From NCBI RefSeq assembly GCF_006345805.1, contig NC_043023.1, forward strand, positions 16,864,001 through 16,928,000: 64,000 nucleotides of DNA, read 5' to 3'. The DNA comes from Octopus sinensis (lineage: Eukaryota). The position numbers and the translations under genes were made by a program. Below the pieces are notes generated by a model. That model was not told the origin of the DNA. It made no database searches and was given only the letters and a program-made list of their open reading frames with translations. Position 1 is the first letter of the stretch; each line of letters starts with the position of its first letter. Shown piece after piece: positions 25,366 to 44,225 of the stretch.

Positions 25366-25734
25366 ATTTATCCCTACCCAGGAGCAGAATATAATGAGCT
25401 TCATCGTGTCACCGAGAGAAGTTCTGTGAAATTTTACGATGCAACTTTTAGAAAGTTTTTATTCCCCAAACGCATTATAACTTGTAATGTATCCAACATC
25501 TATAATTCTGCATTTGCCCGTGGCCTGTGTAAGAGCTCGGTATTCTCCTATGCAATTGCTGGTGGTTACTGTGTAAATTCTTCTGAACCTCGACTTTGGA
25601 TATTTACAGTATATACAAGAAGACAATTTTTGTGTAATCTATGCAGTTGAAAACGTATCTCTTGCGTATTTCATTGAAAAGCAAAGGAAAGATTAAACTT
25701 CTTCCTGATTCGAATCGACGCTGGGTTTCAGAGC
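25366..25734 (+). repeat. Unamplified progenitor of the 278-bp satellite monomer (369 bp, including ~94 bp absent from the array)
   Basis: Aligns by eye to both halves of the monomer. On the minus strand it is continuous with HVDKIIELVVSRKLIEFLEDKDFRSETQRRFESGRS (~25700-25805). Confidence 0.8.
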
Positions 25735-25920
25735 GGAAGTCTTTATCTTCAAGGAATTCTATTAGTTTTCTGCTGACAACGAGTTCTATGATTTTGTCAA
25801 CATGAAAGGCTAGAGAGACAGATGTACATCGTATAGCCTCTGCTCGACATCTTATTCGAATTTTTGCATCACGGGGAATGATATTTTTCTATTGGTGTGC
25901 CATTCCCTTTGGAGCAATAT

Positions 25921-40900: not shown

Positions 40901-43900
40901 TGCCCGTGGCCTGTCTATGATCGGGTAATCTACGCCGTTGAAAACACATATCTCTTAATTTCATTAAAAAGCAAAGGAAAGGGACAACTTCTTCCTGAGC
41001 GGAAGCAACAGTGCGTTTTTGAGCATTTATGCCTACCTGATGCAGAATATAATGAGCTTCATCCCGTAGCCGGAGAGCAGTACCCTTAATTGTTACGATG
41101 CAACTTTTTAGAAGGATTTCATTCCCAAAACGCATTATTACTGGTAATGTATACAACATCTATAATTCTGCATTTGCCCGTGGCCTGTCTATGTCGGGTA
41201 TCTACGCCGTTGAAAACACATATCTCTTAAGTATTTCATTAAAAAGCAAAGGAATGGGACAACTCCTTCCTGAGCGGAAGCAACAGTGGGTTTTAGAGCA
41301 TTTATGCCTACCCTGATGCAGAATATAATGAGCTTCATCCGTGGCCGGAGAGCAGTACCCTTAATTGTTACAATGCAACTTTTTAGAAGGATTTCATTCC
41401 CAAAACGCATTATTACTGGTAATGTATACAACATCTATAATTCTGCATTTGCCCGTGGCCTGTCTAAGATCGGGTAATCTACGCCGTTGAAAAACATATC
41501 TCTTAAGTATTTCATTAAAAAGCAAAGGAAAGGGACAACTTCTTCCTGAGCAGAGGCAACAGTGGGCTTTTGAGCATTTATGCCTACCCTGATGCAGAAT
41601 ATATGAGCTTCATTCCGTGGCCGGAGAGCAGTACCCTTAATTGTTACGATGCAACTCTTTAGAAGGATTTCATTCACAAAACGCATTATTACTGGTAATG
41701 TATACAACATCTATAATTCTGCATTTGCCCGGCCTGTCTATGATCGGGTAATCTACGCCGTTGAAAACACATATCTCTTAAGTATTTCATTAAAAAGCAA
41801 AGGAATGGGACAACTCCTTCCTGAGCGGAAGCAACAGTGGTTTTAGAGCATTTATGCCTACCCTGATGCAGAATATAATGAGCTTCATTCCGTGGCCGGA
41901 GAGCAGTACCCTTAATTGTTACGATGCAACTTTTTAGAAGGATTTCATTCCCAAAACGCATTATTACTGGTAATGTATACAACATCTATAATTCTGCATT
42001 TGCCCGTGGCCTGTCTATAATCGGGTAATCTACGCCGTTGAAAACACATATCTCTTAAGTATTTCATTAAAAAGCAAAGGAAAGGGACAACTTCTTCCTG
42101 AGCGGAAGCAACAGTGGGTTTTTGAGCATTTATGCCTACCCTGATGCAGAATATAATGAGCTTCATCCCGTAGCCGGAGAGCAGTACCCTTAATTGTTAC
42201 GATGCAACTTTTTAGAAGGATTTCATTCCCAAAACGCATTATTACTGGTAATGTATACAACATCTATAATTCTGCATTTGCCCGTGGCCTGTCTATAATC
42301 GGGTAATCTACGCCGTTGAAAACACATATCTCTTAAGTATTTCATTAAAAAGCAAAGGAAAGGGACAACTTCTTCCTGAGCGGAAGCAACAGTGGGTTTT
42401 TGAGCATTTATGCCTACCCTGATGCAGAATATAATGAGCTTCATCCCGTAGCCGGAGAGCAGTACCCTTAATTGTTACGATGCAACTTTTTAGAAGGATT
42501 TCATTCCCAAAACGCATTATTACTGGTAATATATACACATCTATAATTCCGTGGCCTGTCTATGATCGTGTAAGCTACGCCGTTGAAAACACATATCTCT
42601 TAAGTATTTCATTAAAAAGCAAAGGAAAGGGACAGACAACTTCCTGAGCGGAAGCAACAGTGGGTTTTTGAGCATTTATGCCTACCCTGATGCAGAATAT
42701 AATGAGCTTCATCCCGTAGCCGGAGAGCAGTACCCTTAATTGTTACGATGCAACTTTTTAGAAGGATTTCATTCCCAAAACGCATTATTGGTAATGTATA
42801 CAACATCTATAATTCTGCATTTGCCCGTGGCCTGTCTATGATCGTGTAATCTACGCCGTTGAAAAACACATATCTCTTAAGTATTTCATTAAAAAGCAAA
42901 GGAAAGAGACAACTTTTTCCTGAGCGGAAGCAACAGTGGGTTTTTGAGCATTTATGCCTACCCTGATGCAGATTATAATGAGCTTCAATCCGTGACCGGA
43001 GAGCAGTACCCTTAATTGTTACGATGCAACTTTTTAGAAGGATTTCATTCCCAAAACGCATTATTACTGGTAATGTATACAATATCTATAATTCTGCATT
43101 TGCCCGTGGCCTGTCTAAGATTCGGGTAATCTACGCGTTGAAAACGATATCTCTTAAGTATTTCATTAAAAAGCAAAGGACTGGGACAACTCCTTCCTGA
43201 GCGGAAGCAACAGTGGGTTTTAGAGCATTTATGCCTACCCTGATGCAGAATATAATGATCTTCATTCCGTGGCCGGAGAGCAGTACTCTTAATTGTTACA
43301 ATGCAACTTTTTAGAAGGATTTCATTCCCAAAACGCATTATTACTGGTAATGTATACAACATCTATAATTCTGCATTTGCCCGTGGCCTGTCTAAGATCG
43401 GGTAATCTACGCCGTTGAAAACACATATCTCTTAAGTATTTCATTAAAAAGCAAAGGAAAGGGACAACTTCTTCCTGAGCAGAGGCATCAGTGGGTTTTT
43501 GAGCATTTATGCCTACCCTGATGCAGAATATAATGAGCTTCATCCGTGGCCGGAGAGCAGTACCCTTAATTGTTACGATGCAACTTTTTAGAAGGATTTC
43601 ATTCCCAAAACGCATTATTGCTGGTAATGTATACAACATCTATAATTCTGCATTTGCCCCTGGCCTGTCTATGATCGGGTAATCTACGCCGTTGAAAACA
43701 CATATCTCTTAAGTATTTCATTAAAAAGCAAAGGAAAGGGACAACTTCTTCGTGAGCGGAAGCAACAGTGGGTTTTTGAGCATTTATGCCTACCCTGATG
43801 CAGAATATAATGAGCTTCATCCCGTAGCCGGAGAGCAGTACCCTTAATTGTTACGATGCAACTTTTTAGAAGGATTTCATTCCCAAAACGCATTATTACT

Positions 43901-44225
43901 GGTAATGTATACAACATCTATAATTCTGCATTTGCCCGTGGCCTGTCTATGATCGGGTAATCTACGCCGTTTAAAACACATATCTCTTAAGTATTTCATT
44001 AAAAAGCAAAGGAAAGAGACAACTTCTTCGTGAGCGGAAGCAACAGTGGGTTTTTGAGCATTTATGCCTACCCTGATGCAGAATATAATGAGCTTCATTC
44101 CGTAGCCGGAGAGCAGTACCCTTAATTGTTACGATGCAACTTTTTAGAAGGATTTCATTCCAAAACGCATTATTACTGGTAATGTATACAACATCTATAA
44201 TTCTGTATTTGACCGAGGCTTTTCT
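25921..44225 (+). repeat. Satellite array, ~66 x 278-bp monomers
   Basis: GTAATCTACGCCGTTGAAAACACATATC recurs every ~278 bp. The ORF track repeats with the same period (27045, 27323, 27601, 27879, 28157). Confidence 0.99.

What the first reader, a model, noticed from the sequence alone, without database searches (positions are those of the whole stretch)
25366..44225. Birth of a satellite from a dead LINE, with the progenitor preserved on both sides
The monomer equals progenitor 25366-25734 minus ~94 bp. The deleted part is bounded by the microhomology GTATTCT/GTAATCT (25540/25634), and the ends are joined at GAGC|ATTTAT (369-94 is about 275-278). On the minus strand the progenitor continues a CR1-type RT frame (HVDKII...KLIEFLEDKD..SETQRRFESGRS). 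The monomer keeps THCCFRSGRSC, like the RT motif QHGFRxGRSC. More weakly, DVVYITSNNAF resembles DVIYLDFxKAF and the flank VEGQTKESTHSGGIP resembles the SGVPQG region. Start point, deletion and amplified product are all visible in one window.
Basis: partly seen in the sequence, partly recalled or inferred. Interest (0 to 1): 0.75.

Follow-up and report, generated by a model that had tools for sequence, protein, structure and literature searches.

The report
Satellite built from an RPS8 pseudogene
An 18-kb array of 66 copies of a 278-bp unit in an octopod genome was built mainly from a dead retro-copy of the ribosomal protein S8 gene that sits inside a dead LINE, not from the LINE itself, and unamplified sister copies next to the array still show how the unit was cut out.

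Summary
A 278-bp tandem array of 66 copies lies at 25916-44231. Its unit equals flank segment 25366-25734 minus 94 bp (25540-25633, bounded by GTATTCT/GTAATCT) and is closed at GAGC|ATTTAT.

At least 172 bp of the monomer, and probably about 210 bp, is a processed pseudogene of ribosomal protein eS8/RPS8 (PDB eS8 E=6.5e-10). 'DVVYITSNNAF' is eS8 '[11 protein letters not shown]', not the RT motif. Only about 25-56 bp at one end ('THCCFRSGRSC') is LINE RT. The monomer as a whole does not align significantly to a LINE ORF2.

The flanks do carry a real APE-type LINE RT N-terminus, whose nearest named homologues are Octopus and Argonauta proteins. The intronless, disabled RPS8 copy lies inside it. 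In one paralogue the LINE resumes after the pseudogene.

The locus holds four LINE-RPS8 modules and a 3.55-kb direct duplication, 95% identical, on either side of the array. The left 'progenitor' is a sister copy (K2P 0.19 to the monomer), not the literal parent. The array's left edge is a non-homologous junction.

This is a new variant of retroelement-derived satellite. It is a clear case of satellite origin, of moderate interest. Its genome-wide distribution was not tested.

The parts
25916..44231 (.). Tandem array of 66 units of 278 bp. On the + strand each unit reads C-D'-A.
   Evidence: TRF. Mean pairwise identity is about 96.2% at every lag, so there is no global higher-order repeat. Local 3-, 5- and 10-monomer duplications are present.
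25366..25539 (-). Segment A of left module mod2. It encodes RPS8 pseudogene codons about 72-128 and is homologous to monomer positions 1-172.
   Evidence: blastn 84.9%.
25540..25633 (-). Segment B, the 94 bp missing from every monomer. It is probably RPS8 codons about 43-70.
   Evidence: Alignments. The colinear eS8 alignment reaches aa 43 at 25616. B on its own is not significant: 41 of 300 shuffles score as well.
25634..25709 (-). Segment C. Its origin is ambiguous. Positions 25638-25669 may be RPS8 codons 21-31 (IRKR/RFQLHR). Positions 25679-25709 may still be LINE (SGRSLIFPLL against SGRSCLTQLL).
   Evidence: 7 of 300 shuffles. PDB searches with C+B alone found nothing. DNA similarity to an in-window LINE copy falls off after GGAAGAAGT.
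25710..25734 (-). Segment D'. It is the last unambiguous LINE RT codons (ETQRRFESG, equal to TQHGFRSG). The monomer's closing junction lies at 25734.
   Evidence: tblastn of P0005 aa 502-575 to 25879-25679. Alignment.
25131..25678 (-). RPS8 (eS8) processed pseudogene of mod2. It is intronless and carries several stops and frameshifts.
   Evidence: Frameshift-aware alignment of eS8 aa 43-197 to 25163-25616, score 147. The composite peptide hits PDB eS8 at E=5.7e-13.
25735..25915 (-). LINE RT N-terminal fragment of mod2, about aa 490-560. It ends at the non-homologous left junction ...GCAATA|TTCGTGTAATC.
44206..44239 (-). Right junction. The last array A grades into the native A-end and first ~10 bp of B of module mod3. 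A separate deletion of about 170 bp then runs to D'.
44233..44927 (-). LINE RT N-terminal fragment of mod3 (GPDG-like ... FPKNIKEGIICPLHKG ... HVDKIM ... QRRFHSE).
   Evidence: phmmer best E=9.1e-11. tblastn aa 480-602, E=1e-19.
22102..25650 (.). Left copy (S_L) of a 3.55-kb direct segmental duplication.
   Evidence: 95.0-95.4% identical to 44240-44927 plus 45300-48179.
44240..48179 (.). Right copy (S_R) of the segmental duplication. It carries a private SINE insertion at 44928-45299 with the 11-bp target duplication ATAATGTGTGG.
47660..48179 (-). Module mod4, a second RPS8 pseudogene copy with A and B intact. It is cut inside C at 48179.
   Evidence: Monomer to 47893-48060 at 89.3%. tblastn eS8 aa 94-197, E=1.6e-11. 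Sequence.
21308..22800 (-). Module mod1. On the minus strand it reads LINE RT N-terminus (22800-22100), then the RPS8 pseudogene (22100-21412, interrupted by an inverted SINE pair at 21607-21997), then the LINE RT resuming at aa 567-597 (21399-21308).
   Evidence: eS8 aa 108-166 at 21421-21601, z=12.8. LINE aa 567-597, z=13.3. tblastn. Sequence.
48208..48462 (-). LINE ORF2 aa 245-334 directly right of mod4. A piece covering aa 321-389 lies at 21088-21309, left of mod1.
   Evidence: tblastn (E=1.3e-7 and 1.2e-10).

Best explanation
The satellite monomer is a 278-bp piece cut from the junction between a dead LINE and a processed pseudogene of ribosomal protein eS8/RPS8 that lies inside that LINE. 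The proposed history follows, with each step marked as shown or inferred.

1. (Shown) An APE-type LINE copy lay on the minus strand.
2. (Inferred from mod1) An RPS8 mRNA was reverse-transcribed and inserted into its RT-coding region at about codon 567-575. It was probably 5'-truncated near codon 20. In mod1 the LINE resumes at codon 567 after the pseudogene.
3. (Shown) DNA-level duplications spread this LINE-RPS8 module to at least four places in a 27-kb stretch. All copies share the same LINE/RPS8 junction and differ by 5-26%.
4. (The product is shown; the order of events is inferred) In one paralogue, a 369-bp segment spanning the junction became tandem. This segment holds RPS8 codons about 20-128 plus the last 8-19 LINE codons. 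It also lost 94 bp between the near-identical heptamers GTATTCT and GTAATCT.
5. (Inferred from local 3-, 5- and 10-monomer duplications and flat 96% identity) The unit grew to 66 copies by in-register unequal exchange or replication slippage, and the copies were kept alike.
6. (Shown) Later, a 3.55-kb segment was duplicated so that copies lie on both sides of the array. The right copy then gained a SINE.

I propose no cellular function. The array behaves as neutral tandem DNA. Every frame contains stops, and the period is not a multiple of 3.
For: Composition of the monomer:
- Pfam Ribosomal_S8e E=1.6e-4, 22.4 bits, below the 30.2-bit gathering cutoff.
- PDB eS8 E=6.5e-10 for the monomer and 5.7e-13 for the flank composite.
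- Colinear, intronless alignment of eS8 aa 43-197 to 25163-25616.
- Monomer against eS8 z=10.6; against LINE z=1.6.

The LINE is real:
- Best hit E=9.1e-11. Homologue P0005 has endonuclease plus RVT_1. Named homologues come from Octopus sinensis, O. bimaculoides and Argonauta hians.
- The LINE resumes after the pseudogene in mod1 (GKRRLIQLLQHYKWALKRVVNGSN/DVIYVD, z=13.3).

Direction of change, module to monomer:
- The flanks contain the ancestral colinear RPS8 and LINE sequence that the monomer lacks.

Paralogue structure and relative ages:
-. K2P is 0.07 for mod2 against mod4, and 0.14-0.19 for either against the monomer. At 19 sites mod2 and mod4 agree and differ from the consensus.

Mode of growth:
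-.

Later events:
- SINE with an 11-bp target duplication in the right copy only.
Against: - Segments B and C (about 170 bp of the progenitor, about 75 bp of the monomer) cannot be assigned to RPS8 or to the LINE with statistical support on their own. The exact LINE/RPS8 boundary is therefore uncertain by about 30-45 bp.
- No poly(A) tail or clean target-site duplication of the RPS8 retrocopy is visible. The possible duplicated LINE stretch is only about 56% identical by my own hand count; no tool computed it.
- The array is not placed as a simple in-situ duplication predicts. Its left edge joins LINE codon ~490 to the start of C. Its right edge enters a different, more diverged paralogue.
- The monomer is 11-29% different from every module present, by my count over stretches as short as 31 bp. 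The true parent copy may be gone or elsewhere.
- The genome-wide distribution of the monomer is unknown.
Confidence: 0.72

Rival explanations
1. One reading: the monomer is a fragment of a CR1-type LINE reverse transcriptase (motifs QHGFRxGRSC, DVIYLDFxKAF, SGVPQG), amplified in place from the copy at 25366-25734.
For: The flank frame is a true LINE RT N-terminus. 'FRSGRSC' in the monomer is identical to the homologue's motif. Coordinates, deletion and join are correct.
Against: The monomer against LINE ORF2 is not significant: z=1.6, with 2 of 40 shuffles equal or better. The stretch read as DVIYLDF is eS8 (E=6.5e-10). The 'SGGIP' stretch is off-frame RPS8. A LINE copy of the same family in the window (21399-21308) loses DNA similarity to the monomer right after GGAAGAAGT.
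Confidence: 0.07
2. The array was not born where it lies. A concatemer of the unit was made from another paralogous LINE-RPS8 module, for example by rolling-circle copying of a small circle or by a multi-step template-switching replication error. It then joined this locus, with one end in LINE codon ~490 and the other by homology within segment A.
For: The left junction is non-homologous...GCAATA|TTCGTGTAATC, and coincides within about 5 bp with the monomer's A|C junction. The right junction is a homologous transition inside A at about 44205 into a paralogue only about 80% like the monomer. The monomer is no closer than 11% to any resident module. By my own count, the D' segment is nearer to mod1/mod3 while A and C are nearer to mod2/mod4.
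Against: All modules and the monomer share one LINE/RPS8 junction and lie within 27 kb, so a local origin is the simplest reading. Later deletions or unequal exchanges between modules could produce the same edges. There is no direct evidence of circles.
Confidence: 0.2
3. The 278-bp repeat is an old, multi-locus satellite, and the flanking look-alikes are decayed edge monomers.
For: This could not be checked against the genome. The array is well homogenised while its relatives are 11-20% diverged.
Against: The flanks contain sequence that no monomer has and that continues the source genes colinearly. This sequence is RPS8 aa 43-70 and aa 128-197 and LINE aa 480-560. Decayed monomers cannot regain it. 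Within the window, the only consensus matches outside the array are the four modules.
Confidence: 0.06
4. The array is functional, for example as a coding repeat or as a source of antisense small RNAs against RPS8 or the LINE.
For: Many monomers keep 73-77-aa ORFs inherited from the RPS8 frame. The array carries sequence of an abundant mRNA and of a LINE.
Against: The period of 278 is not divisible by 3, and the consensus has stops in all three minus-strand frames. Substitutions concentrate at a few polymorphic sites with no coding pattern tested. There are no Rfam or tRNA hits. No expression data were available.
Confidence: 0.04

Closest known systems
Satellite DNAs derived from segments of transposable elements (reviewed in PMC12628747 and PMC6947457)
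   Same: A sub-segment of a dead retroelement locus is made tandem and amplified. Microhomology lies at the breakpoints. Progenitor-like copies sit nearby.
   Different: The source classes I found listed in PMC12628747 are LTR, gag/pol, LINE untranslated regions and DNA-transposon parts, and the word 'pseudogene' does not occur in that text. I did not open PMC6947457. Here most of the monomer is a host-gene retrocopy, and only about 10-20% is LINE coding sequence.
Processed pseudogenes of ribosomal protein genes
   Same: An intronless, disabled copy of RPS8 covers at least aa 43-197 in 454 bp. It sits in a LINE-rich region.
   Different: Such pseudogenes are normally dispersed single copies (my own knowledge). 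This one has been duplicated at DNA level at least four times, and part of it has been amplified 66-fold in tandem. No poly(A) tail or clear target duplication survives.
D4Z4-type macrosatellites carrying a retrogene (from memory, not tested)
   Same: A tandem array whose unit contains retro-copied host-gene sequence.
   Different: In D4Z4 the unit is 3.3 kb and holds a whole ORF. Here the unit is 278 bp, a deleted and permuted fragment with no ORF through the array.
Chimeric retrocopies made by LINE RT template switching (from memory)
   Same: LINE sequence lies directly 5' of a cellular mRNA copy, in the same orientation.
   Different: In mod1 the LINE continues on the 3' side of the pseudogene from the same codon. 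That favours insertion into a pre-existing LINE over a chimeric cDNA.

Membership tests
Satellite / long tandem repeat | Head-to-tail copies of one unit form a long, uninterrupted array. | tested here: met
   66 copies of 278 bp spanning 18.3 kb, 96% matches. No interruptions.
Satellite / long tandem repeat | High copy number or several loci in the genome. | not testable with these tools
   No eukaryotic genome collection could be searched with DNA. Exact-protein look-ups found nothing.
LINE-derived satellite | The monomer aligns significantly to LINE sequence over most of its length. | tested here: not met
   Monomer dimer against LINE ORF2 aa 441-700: score 55, z=1.6. Only 'FRSGRSC' and its neighbours match.
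RPS8/eS8 processed pseudogene | Significant similarity to eS8. | tested here: met
   PDB eS8 E=6.5e-10 for the monomer and 5.7e-13 for mod2. z=10.6-12.8. The Pfam match (E=1.6e-4, 22.4 bits) is below the 30.2-bit gathering cutoff.
RPS8/eS8 processed pseudogene | The coding sequence is contiguous, without introns. | tested here: met
   aa 43-197 align to 454 bp at 25163-25616. That animal RPS8 genes have introns is my own knowledge.
RPS8/eS8 processed pseudogene | Disabling stops and frameshifts. | tested here: met
   Several stops and at least 3 frameshifts appear in the alignment.
RPS8/eS8 processed pseudogene | Poly(A) tail and target-site duplication. | tested here: inconclusive
   No A-run follows the 3' end at about 25131; repeat X begins there. 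A possible duplicated LINE stretch, codons 567-575, is about 56% identical by my own count.
APE-type non-LTR retrotransposon (LINE) | An RT N-terminal region homologous to proteins with endonuclease plus RVT_1. | tested here: met
   Pfam RVT_1 does not hit the decayed window peptides themselves.
CR1 clade of LINEs | Clade-specific phylogenetic placement of the RT. | not tested
   No clade classifier or reference set was available. Homologue P0005 has a C-terminal 'LYSLERRR'-like motif that I recall from CR1/L2-like elements. That is a lead only.
Higher-order-repeat satellite | Identity peaks at a fixed multiple of the monomer across the array. | tested here: not met
   Mean identity is 0.960-0.965 at all lags from 1 to 30. 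Only local 3-, 5- and 10-monomer duplications are present.

The most novel reading that the evidence does not exclude
A tandem array that fuses antisense-capable sequence of a very abundant housekeeping mRNA (RPS8) with LINE RT sequence might be transcribed. It could then act as a small-RNA (piRNA-like) source or sink touching both the LINE family and RPS8. Alternatively, it could be the product of rolling-circle amplification of an extrachromosomal circle formed at the LINE/retrocopy junction, which would document that route of satellite birth in a mollusc.
Probability: 0.06. Interest if true: 0.75.

Novelty: new variant of a known kind. Interest (0 to 1): 0.45.

Why it matters
Few satellites can be traced to a source sequence with the intermediate steps still readable. 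Here the source genes (RPS8 and a LINE ORF2) give an outside yardstick. They polarise every step: which copy is ancestral, what was deleted and where the unit was closed. The case shows that the raw material of a satellite can be a host-gene retrocopy nested in a transposon, a source class I did not find in the one review I searched. It also shows that motif-spotting by eye mislabelled it as LINE RT. If the array is specific to one octopod lineage, comparing species could date each step.

Tried and rejected
- Pfam scan of stitched LINE-frame peptides found no RVT_1 hit. It unexpectedly gave Ribosomal_S8e, which redirected the work.
- The word-indexed homologue search found nothing with the decayed LINE peptide or with the decayed RPS8 composite. 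The full HMMER search and a clean eS8 query were needed.
- Exact look-ups of a monomer ORF and of a flank ORF in public assemblies found nothing on record. The source contig and other loci could not be fetched.
- My first reading of segment C was RPS8 5'UTR (TOP-like CTTTCCTTTGC) plus start codon (MKYLRD against MGISRD). PDB searches do not support it. It is rivalled by two other readings, RPS8 codons 21-31 and LINE codons 570-584, none significant alone. I dropped the 'full-length mRNA / template-switch chimera' idea once mod1 showed the LINE resuming after the pseudogene.
- My manual alignment 'RRIYTV...EYRAL' for segment B implied an 11-aa deletion. The frameshift-aware alignment prefers 'VYTVNIQSRGSEEF' in another frame. 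The two may reflect a small internal duplication. This is unresolved.
- There is no global higher-order repeat.
- Mutation is only 1.5-fold enriched at CpG sites.
- Rfam and tRNA scans were empty.
- Literature searches found no description of an octopod satellite of this kind, nor of a ribosomal-protein-pseudogene satellite. That is absence from this library only.
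Full report
OBSERVATION

Tandem Repeats Finder reports one dominant array at 25921-44231 with period 278, 66.0 copies, 96% matches and 1% indels. Anchoring on GAGCATTTATGCC gives 66 regularly spaced sites 274-284 bp apart. The 65 whole monomers are 93.2-99.6% identical to their consensus, mean 97.8%.

The consensus matches the left flank in two colinear blocks. Monomer 1-171 matches 25366-25534 at 84.9%. 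Monomer 176-278 matches 25634-25734 at 79.6%. The 94 bp at 25540-25633 is skipped. The heptamers GTATTCT (25540) and GTAATCT (25634) bound the gap. The unit closes at GAGC (25734) | ATTTAT (25366).

WHAT THE MONOMER IS MADE OF

A Pfam scan of stitched minus-strand peptides gave no RVT_1 hit. It gave Ribosomal_S8e for the monomer peptide at E=1.6e-4, 22.4 bits, below the 30.2-bit gathering cutoff. Against PDB sequences, the monomer peptide ('ATGKCRIIDVVYITSNNAFWNEILLKSCIVTIKGTALRPRNEAHYILHQGRHK') matches eS8 chains at E=6.5e-10. The best chain reads '[54 protein letters not shown]'. A composite of the left flank matches at E=5.7e-13.

I built a 208-aa eS8 reference from two database proteins (P0101 and P0013). 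With it, a frameshift-aware protein-to-DNA alignment places eS8 aa 43-197 colinearly on 25163-25616 of the minus strand, score 147. The alignment has several stops and frameshifts and no intron-sized gaps. So 25131-25678 is a processed, disabled RPS8 copy.

Segment A of the monomer (172 bp) is RPS8 codons about 72-128. The monomer dimer scores z=10.6 against eS8 but only z=1.6 against the LINE ORF2, where 2 of 40 shuffles reach the score. 'VEGQTKESTHSGGIP' is an off-frame reading of RPS8 codons about 140-160.

THE LINE IS REAL BUT MINOR

The 64-aa ORF at 44322-44516(-) finds 10 proteins in a full HMMER scan, best E=9.1e-11. Among them, P0005 (984 aa) has Exo_endo_phos, Exo_endo_phos_2 and RVT_1. 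The named relatives are uncharacterised proteins of Octopus sinensis, O. bimaculoides and Argonauta hians. The window is therefore octopod.

tblastn of P0005 against the window gives these placements:
- aa 502-575 on 25879-25679;
- aa 480-602 on 44504-44163;
- 'RLSDTQHGFRSGRSCLTQLL' on the monomer's 'KCSKTQCCFRSGRSCPFPLL'.

The LINE contributes the last 25 bp (D') for certain, and perhaps up to 56 bp.

The 75 bp of segment C cannot be assigned with confidence. Three readings are possible: RPS8 codons 21-31 (IRKR/RFQLHR, 7 of 300 shuffles), LINE codons 570-584, or my first idea of 5'UTR plus start codon. None is significant alone. DNA similarity to a LINE copy of the same family in the window ends right after GGAAGAAGT.

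HOW THE LINE AND RPS8 RELATE

In paralogue mod1 the minus strand reads, in order:
- LINE up to QRRFHSG;
- the RPS8 pseudogene, with aa 108-166 at 21421-21601 (z=12.8), interrupted by an inverted pair of SINEs at 21607-21997;
- LINE again from codon 567, 'GKRRLIQLLQHYKWALKRVVNGSN/DVIYVD' at 21399-21308 (z=13.3).

The LINE resumes where it left off. I therefore infer that an RPS8 retrocopy inserted into a pre-existing LINE. A chimeric cDNA is less likely. No poly(A) tail survives. The candidate target duplication is weak, about 56% identical by my own count.

LOCUS ARCHITECTURE

Self-comparison shows that 22102-25650 is 95.0-95.4% identical to 44240-44927 plus 45300-48179. This is a 3.55-kb direct duplication on either side of the array. 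The 372-bp gap in the right copy is a SINE with the 11-bp target duplication ATAATGTGTGG.

There are four LINE-RPS8 modules:
- mod1, 21308-22800;
- mod3, the array end plus 44233-44927;
- mod4, 47660-48179, with A and B intact and 89.3% identical to the monomer.

All four share the same LINE/RPS8 junction, so they arose by DNA duplication of one original insertion. mod1 and mod3 form one type, 95% alike. mod2 and mod4 form another, also 95% alike. The two types are only 74-79% alike.

The monomer is K2P 0.19 from mod2 and 0.137 from mod4, while mod2 and mod4 differ by 0.07. At 19 sites mod2 and mod4 agree against the consensus. Only 3 and 8 sites support either alternative grouping. The monomer lineage therefore split off before the 3.55-kb duplication. 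mod2 is a sister copy, not the literal parent.

ARRAY EDGES

The left edge is a sharp, non-homologous join of LINE codon ~490 to the start of C...GGAGCAATA|TTCGTGTAATC at 25915/25916. Between D' of mod2 and the array lie 181 bp of LINE. A simple in-situ duplication of 25366-25734 does not predict this.

At the right edge the last A is of array type up to about 44205. It then becomes a diverged native A-end plus the first ~10 bp of B. After that, an independent deletion of about 170 bp runs to D' of mod3.

These edges leave open that the first dimer arose by a multi-step template-switching error among neighbouring modules. It may instead have arisen in a paralogue that was later lost. I give that rival 0.2.

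DIRECTION OF CHANGE AND THE OLD-SATELLITE RIVAL

The flanks hold RPS8 aa 43-70 and aa 128-197, and LINE aa 480-560. These lie in the ancestral order and are absent from every monomer. Decayed edge monomers could not contain them. The change therefore ran from module to monomer. Within the window the consensus matches nothing outside the four modules.

GROWTH OF THE ARRAY

Mean identity between monomers is 0.960-0.965 at every lag from 1 to 30, so there is no global higher-order repeat. About 11 polymorphic positions define subtypes that recur in short runs:
- m46-m50 resemble m51-m55, a lag of 5;
- m5-m7 resemble m15-m17, a lag of 10;
- m7-m8 resemble m10-m11, a lag of 3.

This pattern is what in-register unequal exchange would leave. 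The period is not a multiple of 3, and each minus-strand frame of the consensus has stops. Rfam and tRNA scans are empty. I see no sign of function.

COMPARISON WITH WHAT IS KNOWN

Satellites born from pieces of transposable elements are well documented. One review lists LTRs, gag/pol, LINE untranslated regions and DNA-transposon segments as sources, and its text never mentions pseudogenes (PMC12628747). I found no paper describing an octopod satellite of this kind or a satellite built from a ribosomal-protein pseudogene. That search covers this library only.

I class the finding as a new variant of a known kind. Its value is as a well-polarised example of satellite birth and as a correction of the LINE label. 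Its genome-wide status is untested, which limits the score.

LIMITS

- The source genome could not be searched.
- The eS8 reference is a splice of two non-octopod proteins.
- The frameshift aligner is my own simple script with linear gap costs and mononucleotide shuffles.
- The RLE-type call for the plus-strand element at 23343-24966 rests on memory only.

Noticed in passing
window 9663-14257 and 13478-17988: A separate tandem duplication of about 3.8 kb, 95% identical, unrelated to the array. It carries long (TTA)n/(AAT)n tracts and a 181-bp repeat at 12175-12526 and 15967-16319.
   Followed up: no
window 23343-24966 (+ strand): A 5'-truncated retroelement fragment with a CCHC-like knuckle (CKCGKVGTLKHILSNC) and a 'PD...ELTVP.E' motif. 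From memory it resembles restriction-like-endonuclease LINEs (R2/NeSL-like). Pfam gave only zf-RVT at E=0.11. It splits an older run of LINE sub-fragments.
   Followed up: partly
window 23046-23210, 24967-25131, 45563-45725, 47496-47659: A 165-bp repeat 'X', two copies per duplicated segment. It aligns weakly to LINE ORF2 aa 475-510. Together with 23216-23359 and 22908-23087 (aa 417-476) it looks like an older, decayed tandem duplication of a LINE sub-segment with a period of about 300-345 bp. This locus may have made tandem repeats more than once.
   Followed up: partly
window 21607-21997: Two copies of a roughly 190-bp SINE-like element (GGAGGCGCAATGGCCCAGTGGTTAGGGCAG...) lie in inverted orientation and replace most of segments A and B of mod1. 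The same element was inserted at 44928-45299 with an 11-bp target duplication. ARAGORN and Rfam do not recognise it.
   Followed up: partly
window 48208-48462 and 21088-21309 (- strand): LINE ORF2 aa 245-334 and aa 321-389 lie just outside the two ends of the 27-kb block of modules, overlapping by about 14 codons. The whole block might sit inside, or have grown out of, a single LINE copy.
   Followed up: no
window 20862-21014 (- strand): An ORF with 'LPHPPYSPDIASSDFHLFRSLQNSL', which from memory resembles the C-terminus of a mariner/Tc1 transposase.
   Followed up: no
window 61677-63418: A 1.7-kb (GTAT)n microsatellite, 438 copies at 88% matches, with strong GC skew. A related (ATAC)-rich tract lies in inverted orientation at 357-794.
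   Followed up: no
window 4333-4885, 5139-5544, 5821-6280, 51131-51857, 55318-55553, 56715-57438: Several other short tandem arrays, with periods 185, 138, 184, 242, 56 and 360 bp and 2-4 copies each. Some appear built from SINE-like sequence.
   Followed up: no
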